64,000 nucleotides of DNA, taken from contig NC_079171.1 in the NCBI RefSeq assembly GCF_947568905.1, positions 16,430,001-16,494,000 on the forward strand, in the 5' to 3' direction. This DNA is from Ostrea edulis. Taxonomy: Eukaryota. The stretch's first letter is position 1; every line of letters starts with the position of its first letter. The notes below the pieces were generated by a model that searched no databases, was not told the DNA's origin, and worked only from the letters and a program-made list of their open reading frames with translations. A program made the position numbers and the translations under genes. This document shows positions 1,492 to 56,075 of the stretch, in pieces.

Positions 1492-1907
1492 CAATTTTCG
1501 GTCCATCTTTGCCTTGATGTCCCTAGCCAGCGTGAAGAAAGCCTCCTCTACGTTAATGCTGGCCTTGGCACTCGTCTCCATAAACTTGATTCCATGTTCT
1601 ATTGCCAGCTAACATGTACAAAAAACACATTCTTGTCAAATCGTACATGTAATTTTCTGTATGGTAAATAAGTTGTTTACAAGACTATCTTTTAGTATAA
1701 CCATCAAAGTATCAGGAATGAACCTGACAACAAGGACAAATTCTCCAAAATCTTTTAATGTGGATTAATTTACTAACTTTCTTTAAACATGAATATTTAT
1801 GCTGAAATGAACCTTGTGTATTCCATAGTTACTGCCTACCCCCCTCTTCTTCTGAACACTCTGATTCTGCGAGTGTGGTACTTACTGATTCTGGGAGTAT
1901 CGTATTT

Positions 1908-1944
<37 letters not shown>

Positions 1945-4900
1945 ATTCTGTGAGTATGGTACTTACCGCCTCCCCCTTCTCCTTGGAGACCACCCTTTTA
2001 TCATTCATGTCACATTTGTTACCTAGGATCATCTTGTCAACATCTTGTGAGGCATGCTGTAAAACAGAATATAACACCAAAATTGAACAAATTCTAAAAT
2101 GGCCCATGCACTATAGTTTGATTTTCTATCATCTGTGTCAAGCTAGTTAAGTACAACAATGGTTCTAGCACTGTAATATGGACATTGTGGTTCTTGAAAA
2201 GATTGCAGAATTTTCCAAATTACATAAATATGTTGAACAATACAGTCCTACCATGGCCTCATCCAGAATCATAGTGATATGATGTGAACAAGTTTGAATC
2301 TACACTACATGAGGAGGTTTAAATATTCAGAATTTGACAAACTGCATCCTTGTGGTATGTTCTTGATTTCTTTCACGAGGTTTTCCTTTATATTCAGGGG
2401 TTTTCTTTCATGAGGTTTTTCTTTATATTCAGGGGATTTCTTTCATGAGGTTTTCCTTTATATTCAGGGGTTTTCCTACCATTTTCACACTGGGTCCATG
2501 GTTCGTAGAATTGGTAAAATTGATGCGTAAAATGTTCAAATTGGGAAAATTTGAAAAGGATCCCTTTCTGCTTAATAATCAAGTGAAGAAAATAAAGCTT
2601 ATCTACAACAAATTAACTTTTAAGAAATACAAGCACATGCATCAATTCTGCAAACTTGATGGTTTACAGCAGAGCTGGCAGATTTTTTTAATAGTCAGCC
2701 CTGCTGGTCCATCGGATTTTTCTTTTTCTGAGTTTCATACCCTGACCATGGTCCACTGAATTCATTGTCACTGACAGAAGAATTAACACTTTCATACCCT
2801 GACCACGGTCCACTGAATGCACTGTCACTGACAGAAGAATGAACACTTACATAACCTGACCATGGTCCACTAAACTCATTGTCACTGACAGAAGAATGAA
2901 CACTTACATAACCTGACCATGGTCCACTAAACTCATTGTCACTGACAGAAGAATGAACACTTACATAACCTGACCATGGTCCACTAAACTCACTGTCACT
3001 GACAGAAGAATGAACACTTACAAAACCTGACCATGGTCCACTAAACTCATTGTCACTGACAGAAGAATTAACACTTACATAACCTGACCACGGTCCACTA
3101 AACTCATTGTCACTGACAGAAGAATGAACACTTACATAACCTGACCACGGTCCACTAAACTCACTGTCACTGAAAGAAGAATGAACACTTACATACCCTG
3201 ACCATGGTCCACTAAACTCATTGTCACTGACAGAAGAATGAACACTTACATAACCTGACCACGGTCCACTAAACTCATTGTCACTGACAGAAGAATTAAC
3301 ACTTACATAACCTGACCACGGTCCACTGAATTCACTGTCACTGACAGAAGAATGAACACTTACATAACCTGACCACGGTCCACTAAACTCATTGTCACTG
3401 ACAGAAGAATGAACACTTACATAACCTGACCACGGTCCACTGAATGCACTGTCACTGACAGAAGAATGAACACTTACATAACCTGACCATGGTCCACTAA
3501 ACTCATTGTCACTGACAGAAGAATGAACACTTACATAACCTGACCATGGTCCACTAAACTCATTGTCACTGACAGAAGAATGAACACTTACATACCCTGA
3601 CCACGGTCCACTGAATGCACTGTCACTGACAGAAGAATGAACACTTACATAACCTGACCACGGTCCACTGAATGCACTGTCACTGACAGAAGAATGAACA
3701 CTTACATAACCTGACCACGGTCCACTGAATTCATTGTCACTGACAGAAGAATGAACACTTACATACCCTGACCATGGTCCACTGAATGCACTGTCACTGA
3801 CAGAAGAATGAACACTTACATAACCTGACCACGGTCCACTGAATTCATTGTCACTGACAGAAGAATGAACACTTACATAACCTGACCATGGTCCACTGAA
3901 TGCACTGTCACTGACAGAAGAATGAACACTTACATAACCTGACCACGGTCCACTAAACTCACTGTCACTGACAGAAGAATGAACACTTACATAACCTGAC
4001 CACGGTCCACTGAATTCACTGTCACTGACAGAAGAATTAACACTTTCATACCCTGACCATGGTCCACTAAACTCATTGTCACTGACAGAAGAATTAACAC
4101 TTACATAACCTGACCATGGTCCACTGAACTCACTGTCACTGACAGAAGAATGAACACTTACATAACCTGACCATGGTCCACTGAACTCACTGTCACTGAC
4201 AGAAGAATGAACACTTACATAACCTGACCACGGTCCACTGAACTCATTGTTACTGACAGAAGAATGAACACTTACATAACCTGACCACGGTCCACTGAAT
4301 GCACTGTCACTGACAGAAGAATGAACACTTACATACCCTGACCACGGTCCACTAAACTCACTGTCACTGACAGAAGAATGAACACTTACATAACCTGACC
4401 ACGGTCCACTGAACTCACTGTCACTGACAGAAGAATGAACACTTACATAACCTGACCATGGTCCACTGAACTCACTGTCACTGACAGAAGAATGAACACT
4501 TACATAACCTGACCATGGTCCACTGAACTCACTGTCACTGACAGAAGAATGAACACTTACATAACCTGACCATGGTCCACTGAACTCACTGTCACTGACA
4601 GAAGAATTAACACTTACATAACCTGACCACGGTCCACTGAACTCACTGTCACTGACAGAAGAATTAACACTTACATAACCTGACCATGGTCCACTAAACT
4701 CACTGTCACTGACAGAAGAATGAACACTTACATAACCTGACCATGGTCCACTGAACTCACTGTCACTGACAGAAGAATTAACACTTACATAACCTGACCA
4801 TGGTCCACTGAACTCACTGTCACTGACAGAAGAATGAACACTTACATAACCTGACCACGGTCCACTGAACTCATTGTTACTGACAGAAGAATGAACACTT

Positions 4901-7900
4901 ACATAACCTGACCACGGTCCACTGAATGCACTGTCACTGACAGAAGAATTAACACTTACATACCCTGACCACGGTCCACTGAACTCACTGTCACTGACAG
5001 AAGAATGAACACTTACATAACCTGACCACGGTCCACTGAACTCATTGTCACTGACAGAAGAATGAACACTTACATACCCTGACCACGGTCCACTGAACTC
5101 ACTGTCACTGACAGAAGAATGAACACTTACATAACCAGACCACGGTCCACTGAACACTCACCTCTTCAATATTGCGAATCCAATTACGGATGTTTTCAAA
5201 TGATTTCTCGTTCGTGATGTCATAAACTAACATAATTCCCTGAAAAGAAAAACATTAACTTTATATGTTACAATTTAGCGGTCAATCTCTAGAGAAAAAT
5301 TGGGAAATGAAAAACACTGGTCTTTGTGTTGGTTGTAACACGCAAACAATAAAATAAGAGATGTTGGAGGACAACATAGCTTGCCTACTCACTCTATCAT
5401 CTTGGTTCAAAAAACATAGTCAAGGTTTAAGTTCTGGAAAAGTAGGTCAAAGTCCAAGATAAAGGTCAAAAGTCTTGGTACCAATTAAAAGGCCTTGTCA
5501 TAATTAAGGCATTTAATGTGAAATATTACAGTTCTCTCCCCTTGCTTCAAAACATAAACCAGGAAGCCAAGATTATAGTTTTTGAAAAGTCAGTCCAAGT
5601 CCAAAGCAGAGGTCCCTAGGTCACAAGCCTTGATACCAAATGAAAGATCGGGTGATGAGACATTTACATGTGAAATATCAAAGTCCTATCCACTTTGGGT
5701 GAAACGATACAGCCAAGTTTTTCCTTACAGTGCGAGATTGACACAGGGGTCATGATAATAGCTCTTTGGAAATCCATCTAGCAAGCTAAAATATATACAT
5801 TAATTAGATTAATTAGCTAATCTACCTGTAGATTACTTTTTGAGTATTGAAACTTAATTTTGATATACAATGAAAACTTAAATTCATTAAAGAATTCAAA
5901 CTTCTTTAAAACAAAATAGATAACACTTCTAAATGAAAACATGAAATTGGGAATAAATGAGGTGTGAATTGACTGGCATCTGAACACGGTTAATAAATGA
6001 GGTGTCTGAACACGGTTAATAAATGAGGTCTGAATTGACTGGCATCTGAACACGGTTAATAAATGAGGTCTGAATTGACTGGCATCTGAACACAGTTAAT
6101 AAATGAGGCCTGAATTGACTGGTATCTGAACATGGTTAATAAATGAGGTGTGAATTAACTGGCATCTGAACACGGTTAATAAATGAGGTTTGAATTGACT
6201 GGCATCTGAACACAGTTAATAAATGAGGCCTGAATTGACTGGTATCTGAACATGGTTAATAAATGAGGTGTGAATTGACTGGCATCTGAACATGGTTAAT
6301 AAATGAGGTCTGAATTGACTGGCATCTGAACACAGTTAATAAATGAGGCCTGAATTGACTGGTATCTGAACATGGTTAATAAATGAGGTGTGAATTGACT
6401 GGCATCTGAACATGGTTAATAAATGAGGTCTGAATTGACTGGCATCTGAACAAAGTTAATAAATGAGGCCTGAATTGACTGGTATCTGAACATGGTTAAT
6501 AATCAGGCATAATTCATTGAATTTTCAGTTTGAATGGGCGGGCTATAATAAATCTCTGGACGTAAGTCTTGATATAAGAGTACAATAGTAAGGACATGTT
6601 AGTAATTTTTTGTATGAACATTTTGAGGTGGCAATTGAATAACATAGAGACATAATAACACCTGAATACTGTGCAGAAAAAAGTTTTGTGTTGTACAAAG
6701 ATTGAAATTCATCTACAAAAATCACTTGAATAGTTGATACAACAGTTCTAAAAATGCTTGCAATTTAGAGGAAGATAAATACAAATGATACTTAATGAAC
6801 TGATGAATAGACTGTACATCTATTAACATTGTGTATAAATGGTCCTTACCATAGCCCCTCTGTAGTATGCTGTTGTAATGGTTCGGAACCTCTCCTGTCC
6901 GGCAGTGTCCCTACAGAAAACAAGAGAAGCATGCACTAACACACCCAGTCATTCTTCTCCTATAGAAATTTGACATGAACATTAATAGTGACCCAAAAAT
7001 AAATCAAACCTTGCCATTAGTATCTGAGAAGACAATTTTGAAATAATTGTCTTACTTATTTCTATGACCATCTCTGAACCCCTTCTGTGGTCCATTCCCT
7101 GACCCCTAGGAGCCATAGCATGAACAAACTGCAATTCATACTACATGAAGATCATTGCATGATAATTTGACAAACTGTACCCTTCAAAACTCCATTCTGT
7201 GTTCAGGGATCATGCTTTGAACAAACTTAAATTTCTATTCTACAAGGAAGCTTATAAGCAAGTTTTGAGCCAATGATTTAGTGGTTCTTTTAAAAAAGGA
7301 AGACTTTTAAAAGACCCCACTTTAATTTTAGAATTGTGTAATTATCTCCTCTTGGAAGGGGCCATGTTTATTCATTTTAGCAAACTAGAATCCCCCTAAT
7401 TTACTCAAGGATGCTGTCACTGTGTGGCAAAGGATTCGACCCACAAAAAAAAATTAAACCACCAGATATGGCCTAGTCTTAAAAATGATTGATTTTGATA
7501 TGAAATATTACCCAGGATTTGTGCTATTTGTAATTGTTTTTCTTTTCTTTATATATTTCATAGTATTCAAATACCATGTCTTCAAAATTGGGGTATTTTA
7601 TAGTCACTTTCTTCAATGTAACGTCATGCAAATTAAGTTATGTATGTGCTGATCTCGTCATTATATCAGTATATATGTAATATATACAGCGCTTATGTAT
7701 GTGCTGATCTCGTCATTATATCAGTATATATGTAATATATACAGCACTTATGTATGTGCTGATCTCGTCATTATATCAGTATATATGTAATATATACAGC
7801 ACTTATGTATGTGATGATCTCGTCATTATATCAGTATATATGTAATATATACAGTGCCTTTTGGTCCACTGGTTCTTGAGATGTAAAAAATGTGAAAAGT

Positions 7901-10900
7901 TTACAGACAGTAGACAGATCAATACCAAACATTTTTTAAAAAATTTCCCAACAAACATTCTGTATATATCTTATAGTATATCGTGGTATATCTTTAAAAT
8001 GTGATATAGAATTACAGAAGTGTAATGCAAAACAAATTTTGATCAGAAACATTCTGGTGAGCTAGAAATGAATTGCTTCTTGTGTACAAAGTACGTGTGA
8101 AAGTGGCTTCCTCTCTACAAAGTTGTTTATGTGTGAAGCGACTTCTTTCCTTATCATTTGAATGTGCTTACTCAGTTTGCTGCTTTCACTTCCAAGAGTC
8201 AAGATCTTAACAATACATGTATAATGCATTTTCTCTACATAGATCATAGGAAATATCCTTAGCTAGGGTCATGATTTTCAAACTTTTTGCATCTACGCCT
8301 CATTGCAAACACTACCTATCAAAACACAATTTGTTCCCTAATGATCAAAGTGTGATGACTATAAACCTCTGCCTTTGAAAACATGAAAAATGTTAACAGA
8401 CAGTAGATTTAAGCAACTCTACTAAGAAATAAATATAATCACTTGTGCTAACTGTGATGTAAAACTGTCATTTTCAAACTTGGTAAGATTCAAAATTCAG
8501 TTGACATAATCCTAAATGTTTTCTATCCATTTTACAACAATTATAAATGCCCACCATTTTATGACATCTGATATATTTCCTGTACTCAGGGTGAGCAGGT
8601 AATGCTACATTGACCTTTGTTAAATGAGTATATACCCAAAGCTAAACGGACTGCTTTCTTCTAACTTAACTGCAAAGACGTAAATTTGAAAACAAGTTGA
8701 AATGTAAATATCACATCTAGTAATGTGAAATTGGAAAAATTTTCAAAACTGATTATCATGAATAATCAAACAGTGATTATTGAAGCAATCAATCGACTTC
8801 ACCAATATTAATATATTGATTATTTAAAATCAATAAAGCATTCTTATTTTTACGAAACAATAGGACTGAAATGATCACCGAAATATCGATACTGTTCAAT
8901 ATAAATGCTCGATTCATTGCCTCAATTTTTGGTTCAATAAAGTATGTTGGGCTTGACCAGTATTTATTATTCTTACATGTATGAGGACAAAATGGCGTCT
9001 GATAATGGTCAGACTGCTGTTAGCTTCACCGCCATAGTGGTCTACAGATCAAGCGTTCGCCCCACATGCGGAAGGTCGGGGTTCGAATCCCGGCTGCGAC
9101 AGACTTTTAAAAGTCATTAAAACAGGTGATGACAGTTCCAGCACCAAGCGCTCGGAATTAGGTGTGAATGTCACGGGTCCTTGGAGATGACCTTAAAAAC
9201 GGATGTCCTGTGTCACAGTAGGTGTGGCACGGTAAAGAGAACCCTCACTGCTAAATGGCCCTTAAGCACCAAACACAGGCCTAAATTTGAAGCCCTTCAC
9301 CGGTCTTGGTGACATCTCAGTATGAGTGAAAAATTCTAGAGAGGGATGTTAAACAAGATACAATCTATCAATCCATCGAGTCCGACAAAACCAATAATGA
9401 ACTTCATCAGTTAAAGATGATCTGACCCCATGTTTTATTTGAAATAATCATTCTTCTAAGTTCTATGTTGTGAATTCATTATTGAATATATTTGTTGAGC
9501 TGTCCATTGGGTTTGATAAGATGACCCTTCCTAAATGGATAAGCTAACATTTCCCAATTACTAGAAATTCCCAATTTTTCAGACAATAAAAGTGAAATAC
9601 ATTTCTCACATGATCAACTATTGTCAAAATATAGAGGAAAAACTTTATATCTGGGTGACTGTATGTCAATAAAAAATCCAATGGAAAGGTCTTACTACAA
9701 GAAATACTCATACCAAATATGAAAAGTCTACCCCTTATGGTGTAAAAGATATGACCAAGGTCAACATTTTTGAAAATTTCCAAAAACTAGGTCAAACATT
9801 CAAGGTAATAAGGTCAAAAAATCTGATATCGTTGGAAAGGTTTTCTCACAAGAATTGCACATGCTGAATACAAAAGCAGTACCTTTTTGATTTGAAAGAT
9901 ATGGTTTATATTTGAATTTTCTATAAGTAAGTCAATGTTAGGGTCACCAGATCAAAGATTTTGGTGTTACTAATGGAAAGGTATTGCCACATGGACTACA
10001 CATACTAATATGAAAGCTTTACCTCTTATGGTGTAAAAGATATGGCCAAGGTTAAAGGTTTTTGCCACAGACACACAGACAGACCAAAAACTACATGCCC
10101 TCAAATCTTCGATTCTGGGGGCATAAAAAAACCCACGACAGATTGCAATAAGTCACCAGTGTATACTCAGGTTAAGTCATTCGAGTATACTTGTGTTACA
10201 GTCAGCTGAGTATACTTGTGTTAGTCATCTGAGTGTACTCGTGTTACAGTCATCTGAGTGTACTCATTACAGTCATCTGAGTGTACTCATTAGTCATCTG
10301 AGTGTACTCATGCTACAGTCATCTGAGTGTACTCGTGTTATGGTCATCTGAGTGTACTCATTACAGTCATCTGAGTGTACTCATGTTACAGTCATTTTAG
10401 TATACTCGTGATACAGTCTCTGAGCGTACTCGTGTTATGGTCATCTGAGTGTACTCGTGTTACAGTCATCTGAGTGTACTCATTTAGTTACAGTCATCTG
10501 AGTGTACTCGTGTTACAGTTTCTGAGTGTACTCATGTAGTTACAGTCATCTGAGTGTACTCGTGTTACAGTCATCTGAGTGTGCTCTTGTAGTTACAGTC
10601 ATCTGAGTGTACTCGTGTTATGGTCATCTGAGTGTACTCATTACAGTCATCTGAGTGTACTCATGTTACAGTCATTTTAGTATACTCGTGATACAGTCTC
10701 TGAGCGTACTCGTGTTACAGTCATCTGAGTGTACTCATTTAATTACAGTCATCTGAGTTTACTCATGTTAGTCATCTGAGTGTACTCATGTTACAGTCAT
10801 CTGAGTGTACTCATGTTACAGTTTCTGAGTGTACTCATGTTACAGTCATCTGAGTGTACTCATGTAGTTACAGTCATCTGAGTGTATTAAATAAGAGAGC

Positions 10901-12940
10901 ATTAATGACAGACTCGGGAATTCGAGTCTACTCAGGTTTCAGCCACTGATTGTACTCGTGTTGCAGTCATCCGAGTATACTCAGGTTACGGTCATCCGAG
11001 TGTTTTAAACAGGAGAGCATTAATGACAGACTCAGGAATGTAATAATGTTACTCACCATATCTGTAACTTGATTTTTTTACCATCTAATTCTATTGTCCT
11101 AATTTTAAAATCAATACCTGCAAAGATAAAAGATAAAATAAAACAAGAGCTCCACAAGACGGAACATAACCCCTTACAATAAGTGTCTAAAAGTTTTCCT
11201 ATGAAGTCCCAAACTCAGTAGGGTGCTTTCCCTCCTGATAACAAAGCTACCTGTGAAGTATCAAATCAATTCAGCAACAAATGTGGCCTGTATAAGAGTG
11301 CCTACCAGCTTTTTCTATGAAGTTCCATATTGTCCTTGAACTTAAACCTTTCAGAACCAAAATCAGTAGGGTTCTTTCTTTCTTGATAAAAAAACTACAT
11401 GTGAAGTATAAAATCAATGAAGGAAAAATGTGGCCTGTAGAGTGTCTACAAGCTCAGTGTTAAACATGCACCCACACACATACTCACGTGCACATACTCA
11501 CGTACACACACTCACATACAACTCACGTACACACAGTCTTCACGAAAACTCAGTGGTCCGAAGACCGAGGCCAGTGAATTTTACGGTCGGGTCTGACAGT
11601 GAAAATTAAAAATCAGAAAGTCCGACGGGCTTGTAGATTTTTTGTAAGTCATATTAGATATAATGTTGGATTTAAATATTCTAAACGTCTTCTTTGCTTA
11701 AATTTACCATCAAAATAAAAATAAATAAAAAATAGCACATAAAGTAACCATAGTTTCAGTAAATTAATAAATTGTACAATTTTACAATGCATTCCATAAT
11801 GTGATAAACATATGAAAATTTAGGGGGCCAGTAAATTTCACTGTGGGCCAGTAATTCAGACAGTTCACTGGTCCGACTGGCCAGCAAGTTTTAAATGTTT
11901 TCGTGAAGATTGTACACATACTCATACACATACTCACATACACAAACAAGGCAGTTACTAACTTACTATATATCACCACTTGTGATGAACTGTGAAGGTG
12001 AAGGATAGTTAATCAGAAATGATGAAATAAATGTTTGAATGGAAGACTTCAATGTCTATCAACTTTTAATGAGATCTACAGACCTGGTCAGGAATTGGTT
12101 GGCCAAGGTGAAAGGCCAAGATGATTAGATTGAAATTTTTACATCTTTACAACTTCAGAAAATTACCTTAGACAGTGCTAAAACTCCTAATTATTCAACA
12201 ATGTAAATGATTCAACATCTAAATATCACATATATTTCAACATACAGAAGCAGGATGCTGACCCCCATACATTGACTGGTCCCATGAAAACATTAACAAG
12301 TATCACAATACATAAAACTGGCCCAAAATTCACTGACAGCTAGGTCTCATCTTCTGGACTAGCGGTTAGGGTGAAGACGGATGAGTTTTGTCAGCAACCA
12401 GCTGTGTTAGAACAATATTGACAGATCACAATCAGCATTAATATTTCTTAACTTTACTTCCTTCTGTTGACCCACAATGCACTCAACTCTGGGATGCATA
12501 TAGGTCTGGGATTTAATAGTGAACCACAGTGGCTTAGATATTACTTAGGGTCAACTTTGCATTTTATTCCATAACATCAATATAAACATACACTATAGGT
12601 CTACCCTAAAAGATTAATCAGATCGTTTCTGTCTTTCTCTTTTTTCTTTCTCTTTCGCATCGTGAGTATACACGGAAGGACAACAGGACTGTATAAAGTG
12701 TTTTCAAGAACAAGTGGTCAAATTTCAACTTGGGACGTGGACAAGTGATAGTGAACCTCCACTTAGCCTAGTTATAAAAAGCACCCCCCTTAAACTTAGA
12801 GTTTGTATTTGTTTACCTATTGTTGAAATAAACGTTGAATTAAAAGCATCCTCAGAGAACCTAAACAGCACACAGGTTTTTCCGACACCACTGTCCCCTA
12901 TCAATAAGAGCTTAAACAGGTAATCATATGTTTTTGCCAT
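1492..12940 (-). CDS. RAB8: Rab8 small GTPase, spliced, 3' end outside window. Coding exons 12817-12940, 11057-11117, 6850-6910, 5162-5239, 1967-2056, 1492-1608
   Basis: Exons join in frame with GT-AG ends: [42 protein letters not shown] / [20 protein letters not shown] / [20 protein letters not shown] / [26 protein letters not shown] / [30 protein letters not shown] / [39 protein letters not shown]. Exon sizes 124/61/61/78/90/117 match the animal Rab8 layout with exons 6 and 7 fused. No terminal CaaX exon found in 1-1491. Confidence 0.95.
1860..1966. repeat. Three about 24-bp donor-containing units interrupted by a C32 homopolymer (1912-1943)
   Basis: On the minus strand: gtaagtaccatactcacagaatc / G32 / cagtaaatacgatactcccagaatc / agtaagtaccacactcgcagaatc. 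Confidence 0.75.
2378..2475. repeat. Short tandem repeat (tttcatgaggttttcctttatattcagggg), about 3 copies
   Basis: Direct inspection. Confidence 0.75.
2738..5156. repeat. 57-bp minisatellite, about 42 copies, in Rab8 intron 4
   Basis: 19-codon periodicity ([19 protein letters not shown]); the array starts at the exon 4 donor. Confidence 0.97.
5953..6501. repeat. 40-bp minisatellite, about 13.5 copies, with a 120-bp higher-order period
   Basis: Unit gttaataaatgaggtctgaattgactggcatctgaacacg; blocks starting 6061, 6181 and 6301 are near identical. Confidence 0.92.
7638..7855. repeat. 55-bp tandem repeat, 4 copies
   Basis: ttatgtatgtgctgatctcgtcattatatcagtatatatgtaatatatacagcac repeated. Confidence 0.92.
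9025..9375 (+). mobile_element. tRNA-derived SINE, full length
   Basis: A-box-like tagtggtcta, B box GGTTCGAATCC at 9080-9090, body shared with the copies at 24962 and 37065, and a caat-type simple-repeat tail. Confidence 0.8.
10160..11010. repeat. Degenerate about 24-bp minisatellite (gtcatctgagtgtactcgtgttaca) in Rab8 intron 2
   Basis: Direct inspection; unit length varies. Confidence 0.9.
11534..11912. mobile_element. MITE with 16-bp terminal inverted repeats, inserted in a CA-rich microsatellite
   Basis: cagtcttcacgaaaac ... gttttcgtgaagattg; CAG-type terminus suggests hAT; TSD ambiguous. Confidence 0.6.
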
Positions 12941-12986
12941 CTCTGAAAATTCACAACGGAACCACCCTCGATAACATTATTTCTGT

Positions 12987-13010
12987 TGACGTCACAAACA
13001 GGTACTTCCG
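12987..13010. promoter_or_regulatory. Candidate Rab8 proximal promoter motifs: palindromic CRE and ETS site
   Basis: TGACGTCA at 12987-12994 and ACTTCCG at 13004-13010, 47-70 bp upstream of the Rab8 ATG. Motif match only. Confidence 0.4.
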
Positions 13011-13383
13011 TATTTATTGGTTACCCTTTTGATTTATCATAGGATGACATAGAAAACGTCGGAGGAGTTCCGTTTCTAGGTCACGAGCACCTGAGTCATT
13101 GTCGAGATCGAAATCGAAAGTAAGCAGAATGAACTCCGATGAAATATTTTTATAAATAGTAACTTTATCATAGCATGTGTGTACACTTGAAATTTTCCTT
13201 TACCGTGGTAGTAATTATGTTCACCACATTCGATGCACACAGACCCCACCTATTGTTCATGCCCTCGCAGACCGCTCTAGAATATGATCATGATCGATGA
13301 ATTTGCACACACACACACACACACACGCGAGGGCGCGCACTGTTTAGTACTGTACTGATAACGAATATATATACAGTATTTAC

Positions 13384-37900: not shown

Positions 37901-40900
37901 TAGTACATAGTGTTACTGAATCATGAACTTATGGATAAAGTGCTTTTTGTATATTACATATTGAACTATCTTTGTTGATTGCATATTTATACAGACTGCT
38001 GTGTCAGCATAACTTTATCAATGTTTTATGTCTTGCAGTGATCATTCTTTTAATATGTTTTGTTGTGATAAGAGTTTTATGTTTTGCTGTGATCAGAGTT
38101 TTATGTGTTGCTGTGATCAGAGTTTTATGTTTTTCAGTGATGTGTCTTGTGGGAAATAAGAGTGACCTTGAAGAGAGTAGACAAGTCAATGTCAAAGAAG
38201 CTCAAGAATATGCAGACTCCATTGGAGCTCTGTTCCATGAGACGTCAGCACTCAAAAACATAGGTACACAGATATTTTTATGGTTTCAGCAGATTTCTTT
38301 TGGTACAAAGTTGGAGACAAATTTTAAAAAATTGAAATCTGAATTTAAATATCTTAGTGGTGAGATACAAGTTTTTTTTTATGCCCGTCTTTAAACGGAA
38401 CATTTTATACATTTATGGCATGATAGTGATGAATATATGAGGATTTATTCACCCAAGGAAAATCATATTGCCCGAGTGGAATATAATTTTTCTTGGGTGA
38501 ATAAATCTTCATATCTTCCAAACATTCCTGCAATAAATTGTTTATTATACCAAAACAAAGTAAGGCTATAAAAATACATTTGAAATTGGAGTCCGCTCAT
38601 TTATATGTAGCTGAGATTGCCCTAATGGGAACACCGCACTGTCAACACATTAGAGGGTACAGACAACAAAATACAGTGATATGATAACCAGTTTTTGTAT
38701 TTCCATTCTCCTAGAATGCTGATTTACTTGCTTGTTTTTGTATCAACCAAAACCAGTCAATTTAAAGGTCAAGTACGGTGATTTTCCTAAAACTTGAGTT
38801 TTATACAGAAAAATGTCTGTCATACACTTATGGATTAATTTCCATGCCAATTTTGATAAAAATCACTTGGCGTTAATTACACGGCGCTATCAAACTTTTA
38901 CCTGAGCGATCGATAAATATGTTGTGACGTGAGTTATATTGCTCGTAGCTTATGACGTCATCTGAGACAACTTTCGATTGCATTGATAGGTTTTTATAGT
39001 GTTTACATAGAAAAGTCCTGTATTCATGGTACAATGCGCTGCTTTGAACTGCAAAGTAAAATCGGGACAGGGATTAAGTATGTTTCTTTTCCCAAAAGAC
39101 CCTAAATTTTGAAGAATTTGGACACTGAAACTGAAAAGAGACACTGAGATTTGTGACGAGCCACAAGGATCAGTGAGTGACACTTTTTAATTAACGAGGA
39201 TCAGATTCCCATCAACCCTGACACATCATCCTGTTTGACTCCAAACATAGTGCAAAGTGATATTACCTGGGCATCCTACAAAACAAGTGGAGAGATGTAT
39301 TTCAATTATAAAAAGCTCAACCCAAAAAGGGGGATGCAATCCATCCCTCTCTACATCCACCACTGAATGCATTGTATTCATTGGGTTTGTGATTGCACAT
39401 AAAAATTATGTCACCCATTACCTAGTTCGAATTGATTTTATTTCATTTATTAAATGAAATATCTTTCGAATATTGTCGTACTCGTCATTTCATTTCTTCA
39501 CTATATATATTTTGAAAAAATAAAATATAGTAAAAATGGAAGTGAATTCACTTTTTAAAAAACCATTTTGATAAACGTACCTTATTTATTGTGAGGTCAG
39601 TCCAATTTCCAAAGCTTTTTTTCCAAGTTCATTATGCAAACAGGTACAAGTTTTTCCTTTTCCTAATATGCTTTTAAGTAATTAATCCAATGAATCATTA
39701 AGGCAAAATTTCACACCTGAAAATGCTACAATTCGTTAACTTTGTGTCGTAATATTTCAATTTCGCATTTGACATGTGTTGTGAAGAAATTACATGTACA
39801 TTATACTAATAGGACTAATTTACATTTTATGATATTGTATCTACATGTAGATGTTTAAAAAGGGGGGGGGGTTACAAATAACATTGGGCACAATAAGTTT
39901 TTTTCTTTTGTCTTTTGTTCTTTTTTTCAAAAAGGCATTTTTCAATTAAATATATATCTAGCTAAACACATTTGAATCTGAATCTGATCAATCTCATACT
40001 AGTAAATCCCATAAAAAATACAAACGTGAGAGTAAATCTAGTTAAAATCAGATCCTAAAATACGCTCACAATCGCTACAATTGAGTATATGGCGAGTATC
40101 TATGAAGTCTGATTTTGAGTAGCCTAGATTGTATAAAATACAAAGGTTATCTTTTGATAGAACATTTTTTTCCAATATCATTCCCAATTTTCTATGGACT
40201 GGCCCGGTAAATAATTTCTAACTGAGATTCCAATGAGATATTTGTCGAACATATACATGTATATATCATATAAATATTACTATCTGATGGTTTCGAAATG
40301 GGTGCAGGTACAAACATTATAAAGGTTGAATCCCTAAACTCAAGTGTATCTACGGTATTTCACCGTCACTATCCACGGTGTTGCTAAAACTGGCAATTTC
40401 TCACAGAAATTAAAACGATGATATACAGGCGTAAACAACTACAATTGTCTCAAATGACATAATAAGAAAGGGCGACAATTCCTTCATTCGTTTCTATAAA
40501 CAACGATTTTTTAAATAGGTATTTTGCGCATTTACCTGGATTGAAAAAAGAATAAACACATCAATAAGCTTTTCAAAAGGAGTTTCAATAAATTATAAAC
40601 TTTATTTCCAAATCTATTTTTATTACACTTGACCTTTAACTGTGTATCAGAGACCCACATATTTTGTGCCTTACGAACAATGAAAGTACAATGACTTGGA
40701 CTTATTGTGATGTCACAACCTTGACGTAAAATTTATGGAAAATGCACTAGGCTGCCAAAGAGGTGAAATATGATGGAAAGACATAGTGTTTGAGAGCGAG
40801 ATATGAAGTTTTATCAGGGGGGGGGGGGGGGTACATGTTTTTCTATCTAACTCCTCCCACAGTTTTTGAGTGAGGACCTTATATTACAGAGTGTTTACAT

Positions 40901-52211: not shown

Positions 52212-54494
52212 ATGGGCGCTTCTACGTCAACTTCAGAAGATAGTGATAAGCATTTGATACAGAAAGTTAAAATCGCTTTAGTAGGTACCTACGCTGTTGG
52301 AAAAACATCAATAATAACACGATACATCAGAGATACGTTCACTTCAGACTATATTTATACACGAGGTAAGATAAAGAAAACGACTGAGGGGCGAGTGGTC
52401 AACCTTGTATCAGCCCGTCACATTTGATGAAGTACATTCTTAATACAAACAACAATTTCAAAGATAAATTTTTTTTCTTATGTTGAAACTTGATATTTTT
52501 GTTTCAGGAGGAAGCATAAATAGGAAGTTGATAACTGTTCATGGATATAAACTTCAGATAGAGCTGATGTAAGTTAATATTATTTCAAAACTTAGCAGTT
52601 CTTTATCAATCAATATAAAACCATCACATGTAATTCAGATTATATCTCTATACATGTATGTATTGTTTTATATCTGATATAGAGATACAGGAGGGCAGAA
52701 GTATCAGAAGGAAATTGCCCCTACTTTGTATAAGATAGCACACGTACGTTTTCTATTAATATAACCCAACCTACGTTCCATTCAATGTTCACTTATCTGT
52801 AACAACCTAGACATTATCTCCAAAGGAAAGGCTAAACTGAAATACTTACACCTATAATGCACACCATCAAACGTCCATCCTTCTTTTAATTTTCAAATTT
52901 GATATCTAAACATAGATATAAATTTATACAAGTCGTACTGAAAATTTTAAAACTTAATATGACTGAAAAGTCCATGTTGAATCATTCCACTATGACACTT
53001 CATATTCTGCAGGGTATCTTACTTGTCCACGATATATCAAAACCCCAAAGCTTTGAGCATGTGGAGGAATGGCTAACGGGAATTCGACAGGTAAACTTGC
53101 CATTCTCATTTGTCCATTCACTTTACATCGGATTAATGTAAATAATAATATACAGATTTCCTACAGTCAAACCGATTCATGCACAATAATCATTGATATC
53201 AGTTCAAAACGTTATATTTGCTTCCACAGAACACTCTTGGTGATCCCGTAATAATGCTCATCGGCAATAAAAACGACTTGGATCCGCAGGTCAAATCTGA
53301 TTATCCTTCCACAGAATCCACGAATCTCACAACAGGACTATCTCGTGTTCCGTATGAACAATGCCAAAAGGTAACGTAGATTTAAACCATAGCCTTAGGT
53401 GTGAATTAAAATTTGAAGGAAGTATAGAAATCATAATTCAAACATTTATTTTCTCAAACCTTTTTAAGTCGTTTACAAGTACAGCATTTGTATATTCCTT
53501 CTAAGGTTTAAAATCGTCTGATATTTTACTATCATAACCCTCAGATCATTTATATTGCTCTTATGACTACAGGTTTTTAGGTTTCCTAAACGGATTGTCG
53601 TTGCATCCCTCCATTGGTTTATCATCGTATTCATCTGACGGGTCATCTTATTCCTCTGACGGTTTATCATTGTATTTCTTTGACGGTTTATTATTGTATT
53701 TTCCTCTGACGGTTTATCATCGTTTTCATCTGAAAGTTTATTGTATTCATCTGACGTTTATCATTGTTTTCATCTGAAAGTTTATTGTATTCCTCTGACG
53801 TTTATCATCGTTTTCATCTGACGGTTTATTGTATTCCTCTGACGTTTATCATCGTTTTCATCTGATGGGTTATTTTTGTATTTCTGTCCAGAAGGTACAG
53901 GAGGAGGGTCTCCTTCCATTTTACAGCGAGGTCAGCGCCAAGACCGGCATTAACATAGACCCTGTGTTTGAGTTGCTGGTCAAAGAAATTCTCCATAAAC
54001 AACACAGTCTTCTTGGCACTATCTGGGAGCCTGATCTAGGAAAGGTATTTCTTCCATTGGTTTGGAGTTACATTTTCAGTTCATATGCGGTTCATTCAGT
54101 TTCTCATTTCTAAAAATCTTTACTGAACGTACAGCGATGCTGATTGCGAAAACAATGAATTTTCACTTGATTTTGTAATACATGTTTAACGTTCGTCATA
54201 GTGTGTGCTCTGATAGCTACATGTACAATTAAATTAAAGTTAGAAAGTGGCCCTCTGCAGATCTATGCAAAAAGTATACAATAATCTAAAACGTCAATCT
54301 TGAAATGAAAGTAACAAATGTCGCTTTGATTTAAAATGAAAATAACATTTGTCGCAGTGAAGGATATATGTTGTGCTCCTGAGTTTCACCACACTACGGT
54401 ATTTTATATGTATATTTTTCAGGACGAAGTCGACAAAGGGAGACCTAATGATAAAAATCCGTCACACAAACGCCTCACCTGTACGATTTTATAG
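52212..54494 (+). CDS. Highly diverged Rab8-derived small GTPase, complete, 239 aa. Exons 52212-52365, 52508-52568, 52683-52743, 53013-53090, 53230-53370, 53892-54044, 54423-54494
   Basis: Seven GT-AG exons total 720 nt in frame. G1 GTYAVGKT, G2 YT, G3 DTGGQ, G4 NKND, G5 EVSAK. Starts MGASTS and ends CTIL*. Exons 2-4 are 61/61/78 nt, as in Rab8. Confidence 0.88.
53615..53880. repeat. Degenerate 20-24-bp tandem repeat abutting the exon 6 acceptor of the divergent Rab
   Basis: tttatcatcgttttcatctgacgg and tttattgtattcctctgacg units. Confidence 0.85.
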
Positions 54495-55329
54495 CAGTAT
54501 ATGGAAAATATAACGCCGCACAATGCAAGCCCGGGTCAAAATGTTCTAAACTGTTAAAATTTGTAAAACTGGGTTGTTATTGTTGTCGTTGGTTGTTGTT
54601 GTTGTTTGTGTGTGTGTGTGGGTGTGGGTGTGCGCGTGCAAGATTTGTAGCATTGTATTCCTATACAATAGTTACATGTGTATGTAATGGATAGATGTAC
54701 AATGTACATACTTGAATTGATAATAACTTGGCTGTTATTGTAAAACATCTTTACAGTAAATAATTATCCTTATCACCTTTGTTGTAGAGTATCTGTATCT
54801 GGTGGCATATATGTAGAAATTGACACCTGGAACTCCTCTACTTTTATCATGATAACAAAGCAAGGACTAGTGCTTAGTAGCTTAGCAAAATGTTTACAGG
54901 GAGCAGAGAGGAGGGGTCCGAGACACTCCCTGAGGAATCTAAGCTTTGTTATAACTTTGTATGAGAGACCGAAATAAAATTAGAATCCTGAGGAACTTAC
55001 TTTTGTGTAATAAAACCTTATGCTTGACAGTGTCAAATGCCCTCTATAAGTCTATAAAAGTACACCTGTAAGTGTACCGCTAATCAATATTTTTAAGCCA
55101 TCTGTCAATTCGGGAATTTACAGACAAACACTCACAAAATGAATTGTTCGTACACAAAAGACTGTTAGAATGTTTTACATTTTAAAAAAATTAACAGCAT
55201 CAACGCGTCACGGTAATTATCGCAAATATTCATATCTTGTGATCAGTCATCTAAACATTATAATTAGCTGACCTATTTTTGAATTCTAGATCTTTTGAGA
55301 CATAATTTATTCCAAACCTTCTAAATGAG

Positions 55330-56075
55330 AAGAAAATACATCCCGTGCTGTGGCCTTCAACTCGACATTTAGATATATCGGCATTTTATCTATTAACAAT
55401 GATATTCATTTTCCCTCATATGTCGATTTGATATATTCCAGTGAACTCAAAACATTAACATATTTTGTATTCTTTATAGGATTTATGAGATTGATCAGTG
55501 TTTGCTATAATAAGATGCCGCAGTTCTTACCGACAAATATCTACGTAGTCTTTGGTGATCAGGTTTTCCAACAGTGTGTTGAAATTCCCATGGGCATGAA
55601 TTGAGCTCCTATATTGGCTGACCTGTTTTAGTATTCTTATGGGGTAGAATTTATTCAATAGCTTATAAATGGGAAGAAGAAAAAATCGGTTGCTTTGGAA
55701 TTCAAAGTTTAGATACATCGACGAAGTTTTATCTAAATAACATTCACTTTTATTATCTTTGAACTTGACATTATAGACATCACAGAATCTTACATACATG
55801 TATATGCTTTATTTCTGGATATTTTATTGAGTATAGACGTTACCGGCAAACTAACAATTAACTCAAGCGAGATGACTTCAGCTTCATCGTCAACTCCCTA
55901 TATGCATATTGCAATATTCCATCATCCGTCTCGGAACAGATTCGACACGCGAGGGAATGTTCCACGTATTTTTAAACTGAGGGTTCAGGTTAGACGGACC
56001 CTACATGTGTTTTAAGAGTCTCATTTAAAGTCAGCATTTCTCAAGTTCTGTGGTAATTCCAATGGTTGGGTCGTT
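55330..56075 (+). mobile_element. Decayed, rearranged Penelope-like RT fragments
   Basis: AFNSTFRYI..LSINN and NIYVVFGDQVFQQCVEIPMGMN*APILADLF, with overlapping pieces out of order. Confidence 0.7.

What the first reader, a model, noticed from the sequence alone, without database searches (positions are those of the whole stretch)
52212..54494. Highly diverged Rab8 paralog predicted to be both N-myristoylated and C-terminally prenylated, with a rewired effector surface
Seen: an intact 7-exon, 239-aa GTPase whose intron positions and phases match the Rab8 gene in this window (61/61/78-nt exons 2-4 and a fused exon 6/7 equivalent). G1-G5 nucleotide motifs, the switch I Thr and the catalytic Gln are kept. 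It gains MGASTS (MGxxxS myristoylation consensus), ends CTIL (CaaX, GGTase-I type) and has a 17-aa insert after NKND. In the gapless exon 2-3 alignment all three residues of the Rab hydrophobic triad are replaced (Rab8 F45->I, W62->I, Y77->L), and Thr72, the LRRK2 phosphorylation site, is replaced by Glu. Established: animal Rabs are normally not myristoylated (plant ARA6 and Plasmodium Rab5b are acylated but lack C-terminal prenylation), and T72 phosphorylation blocks GDI binding. Inference: a lineage-specific, GDI-independent, constitutively membrane-anchored Rab with new partners, possibly an unnamed subfamily.
Basis: partly seen in the sequence, partly recalled or inferred. Interest (0 to 1): 0.78.

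Follow-up and report, generated by a model that had tools for sequence, protein, structure and literature searches.

The report
Oyster Rab-like GTPase, two predicted lipid anchors
This is a real, conserved oyster gene for a very diverged Rab-type membrane-traffic switch that is predicted to carry a fatty-acid anchor at its front end and a prenyl anchor at its tail, a combination not described for Rab proteins; the lipids themselves are so far only predicted from sequence.

Summary
Window 52212-54494 (+) carries an intact 7-exon, 239-aa small GTPase, identical to the RefSeq protein "ras-related protein Rab-13-like" of Ostrea edulis. Orthologues exist in Saccostrea, Crassostrea virginica, C. gigas and C. 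angulata. A syntenic copy at 45% identity lies on a contig of unknown species. All keep Met-Gly-x-Ser-x-Ser at the start and Cys-x-Ile-Leu at the end. The gene is under purifying selection (dN/dS about 0.15), and many C. gigas mRNA contigs encode the orthologue.

Its first five introns match the neighbouring Rab8 gene in position and phase. Sequence trees cannot place it: it is 29% identical to that Rab8, and a Rab8 clade is neither recovered nor rejected. The switch and interswitch residues that define Rabs are replaced by family-specific invariant ones.

The CaaX-Leu tail is not new, because Rab8 has one too. Glu72 is not family-wide: Crassostrea has Lys.

Best reading: a bivalve-restricted Rab derivative with a changed partner surface, probably N-myristoylated and geranylgeranylated. 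Lipidation and independence from GDI are inferred, not shown. It is a new variant of a known kind, of moderate interest. No earlier scan note covered this gene.

The parts
52212..52365 (+). Exon 1 (154 nt): start codon, MGASTS N-myristoylation consensus, an 18-aa hydrophilic N-terminal extension, P-loop GTYAVGKTS, helix 1 and the switch I Thr (YTRG). It ends in phase 1.
   Evidence: Pfam Ras/Roc; in-frame TGA upstream; M1 G2 S4 S6 invariant
52508..52568 (+). Exon 2 (61 nt): interswitch strands. Rab8 F45 and W62 are both replaced by Ile.
52683..52743 (+). Exon 3 (61 nt): DTGGQ and switch II (KYQKEIAPTLYKIAH). It holds the Glu at the Rab8 T72 position and the Leu at the Y77 position.
53013..53090 (+). 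Exon 4 (78 nt): strand 4 and helix 3 (GILLVHDISKPQSFEHVEEWLTGIRQ).
53230..53370 (+). Exon 5 (141 nt): GNKND (G4), followed by a 17-aa insert relative to Rab8, at the place where Rho GTPases carry their insert. Residues 140-153 are modelled as disordered, but the insert has conserved residues (D136 P137 K140 D142 N150 L151 G154 R157 V158).
53892..54044 (+). Exon 6 (153 nt): SAK (G5), helix 5, and the oyster-conserved LLGxIWEPD motif.
54423..54494 (+). Exon 7 (72 nt including the stop): disordered hypervariable tail ending in the CaaX box CTIL.
   Evidence: An RNA-library contig starts at the exon 7 acceptor.
54495..55014 (+). Probable 3' UTR. RNA-library contigs cover 54421-54572 and 54768-54960. 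The first AATAAA signals on the + strand lie at 54973 and 55009.
1492..13501 (-). Neighbouring canonical Rab8 gene, used as the reference for intron positions. Coding exons: 12940-12817, 11117-11057, 6910-6850, 5239-5162, 2056-1967, 1608-1492. There is an alternative first coding exon at 13501-13384. The C-terminal exon lies outside the window.

Best explanation
The locus encodes a functional, bivalve-restricted, highly diverged member of the Rab branch of small GTPases. It most likely descends from a Rab8-type gene.

It keeps the nucleotide-binding machinery (G1-G5, the switch I Thr and the catalytic Gln), so it should still cycle as a GTP/GDP switch. The residues through which ordinary Rabs are read by effectors, REP and GDI have been replaced by a different set that is invariant within the family. 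These are RabF1-F4, the F45/W62/Y77 triad and the switch II face.

Membrane attachment is predicted to use two lipids on two flexible ends. One is co-translational N-myristoylation of Gly2 (MG-x-S-x-S). The other is geranylgeranylation of the C-terminal Cys in C-x-I-L, probably by GGTase-I without REP. Neither lipid alone would hold the protein stably, but together they would. GDI could at most mask the prenyl group, so the protein would stay membrane-resident through the nucleotide cycle.

Shown here: gene structure, conservation, purifying selection, transcription of the C. gigas orthologue, a Rab-like fold and the altered surface. Inferred: both lipid modifications, GDI/REP independence, and the partners.
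For: Gene and orthologues: the gene model equals the RefSeq protein. Orthologues in Saccostrea, C. virginica, C. gigas and C. angulata are 60-81% identical. M1, G2, S4, S6, C236, I238 and L239 are invariant while the neighbouring residues vary. A 45%-identical orthologue on the L002 contig is intact and has the same seven-exon layout. It has the same upstream neighbour gene, starts MGKSNS and ends CTIL.

Selection and expression: dN/dS is 0.15 between O. edulis and C. gigas. Full-length C. gigas mRNA contigs from many runs start their ORF at the MG codon. The '249-aa' form is a GTG start chosen by a bacterial-style ORF caller. In O. edulis, an RNA-library contig begins at the exon 7 acceptor and a second one ends just before the first AATAAA.

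Fold and family: Pfam Ras scores 115 bits for the orthologue. The AlphaFold model has a core pLDDT above 90, with residues 1-13, 140-153 and 214-239 disordered. The best structural matches are Rab3B, Rab8a, Rab11 and Rab1, with target TM-scores of 0.92-0.95.

Origin: five shared intron positions and phases with the window's Rab8, whereas the Rab21/22/31-like gene in the same window is split elsewhere.

Altered surface: Y27, R51, G53, I55, I72, G75, Y79, Q80 and H98 are invariant in the family and rare or absent among 82 Rab homologues.

Literature: the known N-myristoylated Rabs (PfRab5B, ARA6) lack the C-terminal prenyl motif (PMC3912013, PMC5869587). Rab8 and Rab13 carry CaaX boxes, and Rab8 can be modified by GGTase-I in vitro (PMC1175975). 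Phosphorylation of T72 in switch II governs which partners bind Rab8 (PMC4769169, PMC7139218).
Against: - No lipid has been detected on this protein. The myristoylation call rests on a consensus pattern plus conservation.
- The L002 copy has Lys at position 3, which the strict PROSITE pattern excludes. From my own knowledge, Arf6 (MGKVLS) is nevertheless myristoylated.
- The RefSeq model for Saccostrea cucullata starts 10 residues upstream of the MG. If that start is real, Gly2 would be internal in that species.
- The Kozak -3 base is T in both O. edulis and C. gigas.
- Rabs with CaaX boxes are usually prenylated by RabGGTase in vivo (PMC1175975), so REP independence is not a given.
- Expression evidence in O. 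edulis itself is thin: two short contigs from one small RNA library, with no junction letters seen.
- Descent from Rab8 is not recovered by sequence.
Confidence: 0.6

Rival explanations
1. It is a diverged but conventionally anchored Rab-like GTPase. Only the C-terminal CaaX cysteine is lipidated. The conserved MG-x-S-x-S start serves another purpose, such as N-terminal processing, phosphorylation or partner binding, or it is not the true N-terminus.
For: No experimental lipid data exist. The Saccostrea cucullata RefSeq model has an upstream start. The L002 copy fails the strict PROSITE pattern. The Kozak -3 base is weak. Myristate is not needed if the geranylgeranyl group plus the few basic tail residues are enough.
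Against: Gly2, Ser4 and Ser6 are invariant across copies that are only 45-81% identical, while residues 7-14 vary freely. O. edulis has an in-frame stop upstream of the start. The C. gigas mRNAs have no in-frame upstream ATG. The N-terminal 13-16 residues are disordered and hydrophilic, as in typical NMT substrates.
Confidence: 0.25
2. It is not a Rab8 derivative. It belongs to an older molluscan Rab-like family that also includes the gastropod protein P0263. The family became fast-evolving early, and the lipid motifs were added later in the bivalve line. Its position 39 kb from Rab8 is coincidental.
For: The Batillaria protein P0263 is sister to the bivalve family with 99/96 support. It shares TxGG, Leu at the Y77 position and Tyr79, but it ends CCQVT and has no MG start. 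The family does not group with the window's Rab8 in either tree. The genes within 10 kb differ between the C. virginica and C. angulata loci.
Against: Five of six introns match Rab8 in position and phase. The Batillaria gene shares most of those positions too, so an old family could still come from a Rab8-type gene. The C-x-x-L box resembles that of Rab8. The AU test does not reject a clade of the family plus Rab8 (p 0.114). The join with P0263 is a meeting of long branches, which the tree tool itself flags.
Confidence: 0.3
3. It is a decaying or functionless duplicate that only looks intact.
For: It is very diverged from all canonical Rabs (about 30% identity) and its Rab family motifs are degenerate. 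I recovered no full-length O. edulis transcript.
Against: The ORF is intact, with the same exon layout, in at least six species. dN/dS is 0.15. The G1-G5 motifs are invariant. The C. gigas orthologue is represented by hundreds of spliced mRNA contigs.
Confidence: 0.03

Closest known systems
Rab8 / Rab10 / Rab13 group (Sec4 in yeast)
   Same: Both have the small-GTPase fold with G1-G5. Five intron positions and phases are identical to the Rab8 gene 39 kb away. Both have a single-Cys CaaX box ending in Leu, as in Rab8 CVLL/CSLL (PMC1175975). Rab10, Sec4 and Rab8 are marginally the best PDB profile hits, and Rab8a is among the best structural matches.
   Different: The candidate is only 29% identical to the window's Rab8 and is not joined to it in trees. 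The hydrophobic triad, RabF1-F4 and the T72 site are replaced. It has a 10-residue longer N-terminus with an MG-x-S-x-S start, a 17-aa insert after NKxD, Tyr at the Ras G12 position, and DTGGQ instead of DTAGQ.
N-acylated Rab5 relatives: plant ARA6/RabF1 and Plasmodium Rab5B
   Same: These are also lineage-specific Rab paralogues that acquired an N-terminal Gly myristoylation signal (PMC3912013, PMC3871812, PMC5869587).
   Different: They also carry a palmitoylatable Cys next to the Gly and have lost the C-terminal prenylation motif. The oyster protein has no N-terminal Cys and keeps an invariant CaaX box. It is an animal protein and is not Rab5-like.
Arf/Arl GTPases
   Same: Both have a predicted N-terminal myristoyl-Gly and a Gly-Gly-Gln G3 motif (DTGGQ against Arf DVGGQ; the Arf motif is from my own knowledge).
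   Different: For the orthologue, Pfam Ras scores 115 bits and Arf 38 bits. The N-terminus is hydrophilic and acidic and is modelled as disordered rather than as an amphipathic helix. The candidate has a C-terminal CaaX box, and all its fold matches are Rabs.
Rheb variants with altered membrane anchors (Zahonova et al. 2018, PMC5869587)
   Same: This is the same kind of evolutionary tinkering with the membrane-attachment device of a Ras-superfamily GTPase. It includes N-myristoylated forms, and forms proposed to bind membranes through both termini.
   Different: It concerns a different family (Rheb) in protists. The two-terminus cases there combine a lipid-binding domain with a prenyl group, not myristate with a prenyl group.

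Membership tests
Ras-superfamily small GTPase | G1 GxxxxGK[ST], switch I Thr, G3 DxxGQ, G4 NKxD, G5 SAK, and an alpha/beta G-domain fold | tested here: met
   All motifs are present and invariant in the family. Pfam Ras scores 115 bits for the orthologue, and single exons also hit Ras. The core pLDDT of the model is above 90.
Rab family | The closest solved relatives and fold matches are Rabs | tested here: met
   All 60 listed PDB hits of the profile search are Rab/Ypt/Sec4 proteins. The top Foldseek matches are Rab3B, Rab8a, Rab11 and Rab1, with target TM-scores of 0.92-0.95.
Rab family | RabF1-F5 motifs (IGVDF, KLQIW, RFrsiT, YYRGA, LVYDIT; Pereira-Leal and Seabra, recalled from my own knowledge) and the F45/W62/Y77 hydrophobic triad | tested here: not met
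   The corresponding stretches are RGGSI, QIELI, YQKEIA, LYKIA and LVHDIS. At these columns the family residues are rare or absent among 82 Rab homologues. Only RabF5 is largely kept.
Rab family | C-terminal Cys prenylation motif after a disordered hypervariable tail | tested here: met
   The C-terminus is CTIL or CIIL in every copy. Residues 214-239 are disordered in the model. Prenylation itself was not tested.
Rab8/10/13 subfamily | Shared gene structure with Rab8 | tested here: met
   The first five introns are at the same codons and phases as in the window's Rab8. The Rab21/22/31-like gene in the same window is split at other places. How specific these positions are among all Rab subfamilies was not tested.
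Rab8/10/13 subfamily | Phylogenetic grouping with Rab8/10/13 | tested here: inconclusive
   The family does not group with the window's Rab8. A joint clade is 18.9 log-likelihood units worse but is not rejected (AU p 0.114). The reference set was mostly unnamed metagenomic Rabs, so no curated subfamily labels were available.
Rab8/10/13 subfamily | Switch II Thr72 (the LRRK2 site) and the conserved [10 protein letters not shown] sequence | tested here: not met
   The T72 position is E in Ostrea and Saccostrea, D in L002 and K in Crassostrea. The switch II sequence is unrelated.
ARA6 / Rab5B-type N-acylated Rabs | MGC start (myristoyl plus palmitoyl), loss of the C-terminal Cys motif, and Rab5 affinity | tested here: not met
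   The first 20 residues contain no Cys. The CaaX box is retained. Rab5/Ypt51 is not a preferred hit.
NMT substrates (N-myristoylated proteins) | Initiator Met followed by Gly, a small uncharged residue at position 3, Ser/Thr/Ala/Gly/Cys/Asn at position 6, no Pro at position 7, and a hydrophilic linker | tested here: met
   The PROSITE PS00008-type pattern matches in 7 of 8 copies. L002 has Lys at position 3. The N-terminus is disordered. Actual myristoylation is not testable with these tools.
GGTase-I substrates | C-a-a-X with X = Leu | tested here: met
   The C-terminus is C-[TI]-I-L in all copies. Which enzyme acts in vivo is not testable here. CaaX Rabs are usually modified by RabGGTase (PMC1175975).

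The most novel reading that the evidence does not exclude
This is the first Rab-family GTPase, and the first in an animal, that is anchored by both an N-terminal myristate and a C-terminal geranylgeranyl group. It has escaped the REP/GDI delivery-and-extraction cycle, so it works as a permanently membrane-resident switch with its own private set of regulators and effectors. It has been conserved in oysters and at least one more distant bivalve for well over 100 million years (the age is my own rough estimate).
Probability: 0.4. Interest if true: 0.62.

Novelty: new variant of a known kind. Interest (0 to 1): 0.5.

Why it matters
Rab GTPases are thought to depend on REP and GDI to reach and leave membranes. 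The few known myristoylated Rabs gave up prenylation. A conserved Rab derivative that keeps the prenyl box, adds a myristoylation signal and has rebuilt the whole GDI/effector face would be a natural experiment. It would show what a Rab switch does when it cannot be recycled through the cytosol. It would also be a further example of how the membrane anchors of small GTPases are re-engineered in evolution.

Practically, the automatic names "Rab-13-like" and "RabC-like" in oyster genomes are misleading. These genes form a family of their own.

Tried and rejected
- The spliced protein has no single DNA reference, so I searched with exon 1 alone. That recovered full-length orthologues and, through them, the exact RefSeq protein P0037, which I used from then on.
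- The first AlphaFold run, with seven family sequences, was uninformative (pLDDT 40). It was repeated with a 90-sequence alignment.
- The ESM Atlas feature search gave only generic small-GTPase clusters (Rap-, Rho- and Arf-named) and no placement.
- Of the sequencing runs laid on the locus, three were DNA (they cover the introns and show no junctions). Only one small RNA library touched the gene, and only at its 3' end.
- No transcript contig encodes the exact O. edulis protein, and P0006 had no contig on record.
- The '249-aa' C. gigas form looked like an in-frame N-terminal extension that would abolish myristoylation. It turned out to be a GTG start picked by a prokaryote-style ORF caller.
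- Trees with 93 and 38 sequences could not resolve the backbone. The available references were mostly unnamed protist Rabs, so no subfamily assignment was possible.
- Literature searches for oyster Rab surveys and for Rabs with both myristate and prenyl groups found nothing on this gene.
- Pseudogene and mis-modelled-gene readings were rejected.
- No contig was taken for human, and no N stretch was touched.
Full report
**1. What is in the sequence**

Reading 51900-54800 and splicing the seven proposed exons gives a 720-nt ORF of 239 codons. Every intron is bounded by GT and AG, and the exon sizes are 154/61/61/78/141/153/72 nt. An in-frame TGA lies five codons upstream of the ATG, after a short upstream ORF.

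Single exons hit Pfam Ras and Roc. The protein starts MGASTS and ends CTIL. It carries GTYAVGKT, a switch I Thr, DTGGQ, NKND and SAK.

The translation is identical to P0037, "ras-related protein Rab-13-like [Ostrea edulis]". That protein is encoded on chromosome OX387711.1 of assembly GCA_947568905.1.

**2. Comparison with the Rab8 gene in the window**

A canonical Rab8 gene lies on the minus strand. Its coding exons are 12940-12817, 11117-11057, 6910-6850, 5239-5162, 2056-1967 and 1608-1492, with sizes 124/61/61/78/90/117 nt.

Its first five introns interrupt the same aligned codons in the same phases as those of the candidate. They fall after the switch I Gly (phase 1), before the DT(A/G)GQ Asp (phase 2), and at three phase-0 sites. 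Exon 5 of the candidate is 17 codons longer, which is the insert after NKND.

A third GTPase gene in the window is Rab21/22/31-like by its best PDB hits. It is split at other places, so the match with Rab8 is not a property of all Rab genes. I could not test how specific these positions are among the other Rab subfamilies.

**3. Relatives**

An exhaustive search with exon 1 and two word-index searches found a compact family:
- Saccostrea echinata and S. cucullata, 81% and 77% identical to the candidate.
- Crassostrea virginica ("RabC-like"), 60% identical.
- C. gigas and C. angulata ("Rab-13-like"), 63% identical.

With the family profile, members score 447-483 bits and the next protein scores 122 bits.

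A contig of unknown species (ENA ERZ26168041, locus L002) carries a 45%-identical copy. I modelled it as an intact 244-aa ORF with the same seven-exon layout (145/61/61/78/159/144/87 nt). It starts MGKSNS and ends CTIL. The gene upstream of it matches the upstream neighbour in the window and in C. angulata, so it is a syntenic orthologue.

**4. Conservation and selection**

In the seven-sequence oyster alignment, M1, G2, S4, S6, C236, I238, L239 and all G motifs are invariant. Residues 7-14 and most of the tail vary.

Between O. edulis and C. gigas, dN is 0.245 and dS about 1.65, so dN/dS is about 0.15. This is purifying selection, although dS is near saturation.

Glu at the Rab8 T72 position is not conserved. 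It is E in Ostrea and Saccostrea, D in L002 and K in Crassostrea.

**5. Expression**

The C. gigas cluster has full-length forms seen on up to 78 contigs each, all 1.0-1.8 kb Logan contigs. The ones I fetched are spliced mRNAs from several independent runs.

The common "249-aa" form begins at a GTG chosen by a bacterial-style ORF caller. The first in-frame ATG of those mRNAs is the MG codon.

For O. edulis itself, three of the four runs laid on the locus are DNA. The one RNA library gives two contigs:
- One covers 54421-54572. It starts at the exon 7 acceptor and has five further letters that do not fit the genome, as expected for a spliced read.
- One covers 54768-54960. It ends just before the first AATAAA at 54973.

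This is suggestive evidence for expression, not proof.

**6. Fold and placement**

With a 90-sequence alignment, AlphaFold gives a confident G domain (core blocks at pLDDT 87-96). Residues 1-13, the insert 140-153 and the tail 214-239 are disordered.

Foldseek's best matches are Rab3B, Rab8a, Rab11a, Rab1 and Rab27, with target TM-scores of 0.92-0.95.

Sequence gives no subfamily:
- PDB profile scores are flat: Rab10 98, Sec4 96, Rab8A 95, Rab2 95, Rab14 93.
- The candidate is 29% identical to the window's Rab8.
- Trees do not join the two.
- Forcing a joint clade costs 18.9 log-likelihood units, but the AU test does not reject it (p = 0.114).

A gastropod protein, Batillaria attramentaria P0263, is sister to the bivalve family with 99/96 support. 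It has 211 aa, ends CCQVT and has no MG start. It shares TxGG, Leu at the Y77 position and Tyr79, and most of the same intron positions. This join is between long branches and may be an artefact. If it is real, the diverged G domain is older than the lipid motifs.

**7. The altered surface**

I compared the family with 82 Rab homologues in one alignment.

| Family residue | Commonest residues in the 82 homologues |
|---|---|
| Tyr27 (the Ras G12 position) | Ser 26, Thr 19, Gly 15, Ala 8, Gln 7; Tyr not among them |
| Arg51 | Ile or Val in 72 |
| Gly53 | Ile, Val or Leu in 78 |
| Ile55 (Rab8 F45) | Phe in 52 |
| Ile72 (Rab8 W62) | Trp or Tyr in 66 |
| Gly75 (Rab8 A65) | Ala in 80 |
| Tyr79 | Arg or Lys in 78 |
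| Gln80 | Phe or Tyr in 81 |
| Leu/Phe87 (Rab8 Y77) | Tyr in 74 |
| His98 | Tyr or Phe in 81 |

So the switch I, interswitch and switch II face is replaced rather than merely relaxed. This face includes the hydrophobic triad and four of the five Rab family motifs. Tyr27 and Gly75 may also change GTP hydrolysis or GAP sensitivity; that is an inference.

**8. Mechanism proposed**

*N-terminal lipid.* The start fits the N-myristoyltransferase consensus in 7 of 8 copies. From my own knowledge, Arf6 shows that Lys at position 3, as in L002, is tolerated. The motif sits on a disordered hydrophilic stretch.

*C-terminal lipid.* The C-x-I-L end is a CaaX box of the geranylgeranyl type. Rab8 (CVLL/CSLL) and Rab13 (CSLG) also have CaaX boxes. 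Such Rabs are usually prenylated by RabGGTase in vivo, although Rab8 can be modified by GGTase-I in vitro (PMC1175975). The box is therefore inherited, not gained. Because the REP/GDI-binding face is gone, the GGTase-I route is the more likely one here.

*Combined effect.* One myristate and one geranylgeranyl on the two flexible ends would together give stable membrane binding. From general knowledge of the Ras fold, both ends leave the G domain on the side opposite the switches. GDI cannot bury the myristate.

*What is known elsewhere.* The known myristoylated Rabs, Plasmodium Rab5B and plant ARA6, lack C-terminal prenylation (PMC3912013, PMC3871812, PMC5869587). I found no report of a Rab with both lipids.

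*Position 72.* In Rab8, phosphorylation of T72 in switch II governs which partners bind (PMC4769169, PMC7139218). A fixed acidic residue there fits loss of GDI control, but that residue is Lys in Crassostrea.

**9. Verdict**

The family is real, conserved, restricted to bivalves as far as the databases show, and unnamed except by best-hit labels. Dual lipidation is a well-founded prediction. GDI independence and new partners are reasonable inferences.

The Rab8 origin rests on gene structure and the CaaX-Leu box, not on sequence phylogeny. I rate the finding a new variant of a known kind, with moderate interest (0.5).

Noticed in passing
window 13501-13384 (-): This is a second possible first coding exon of Rab8. 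It has its own ATG and GT donor and encodes a different P-loop/helix 1/switch I half ([40 protein letters not shown]). It is slightly more similar to the candidate's exon 1 than the canonical exon is (46% against 42%). An earlier scan note (s1-279173) also flags it.
   Followed up: partly
window 27374-38256 (+): A third small-GTPase gene lies between Rab8 and the candidate. Exon pieces are at 27374-27490, 31304-31390, 33920-34018 and 38110-38256. Its best PDB hits are Rab31, Rab21, Rab5 and Rab22. Its introns lie at other positions than in Rab8 and the candidate, so the window holds three Rab-type genes within 55 kb.
   Followed up: partly
window ~49600-50830 (+): This is the upstream neighbour gene. 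It has a 21-nt tandem repeat that stays open in three frames (49.8-50.2 kb), followed by a Cys-rich, membrane-like exon (50191-50484). It has no Pfam family. It is conserved as the upstream neighbour of the orthologue in C. angulata (L013) and in the unknown-species contig L002.
   Followed up: partly
window 53580-53880: Intron 5 of the candidate holds a tandem repeat of roughly 44 nt (tctgacggtttatcatcgttttca...).
   Followed up: no
window 5952-6458: AATAAA recurs every 40 nt on the + strand. This is a 40-nt tandem repeat inside a Rab8 intron.
   Followed up: no
window 55228-55500: This is a very high-copy repeat. Summed contig depth reaches the thousands to tens of thousands in the DNA runs, with many loose ends at 55346, 55380, 55461/2 and 55497. 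It is probably a transposable element or satellite boundary.
   Followed up: no
window 47180-47454 and 47719-47856: These stretches match, at protein level, introns of the orthologous loci in C. virginica (L012 13730-13980) and in L002 (13524-13619 and 14456-14593). They look like a transposable-element family shared among bivalves.
   Followed up: no
L014 (Batillaria attramentaria JACVVK020000605.1) 10001-18245: This gastropod Rab-like gene (P0263) shares the TxGG switch I, Leu at the Y77 position and Tyr79 with the bivalve family, and most of its intron positions. It has DAAGH instead of DTGGQ (no catalytic Gln), a CCQVT end and no MG start.
   Followed up: partly
C. virginica proteins P0153 / P0154: Two nearly identical C. 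virginica RefSeq proteins (XP_022309016.1 and XP_022308863.1) suggest either a recent duplicate or two haplotypes of the gene in that species.
   Followed up: no
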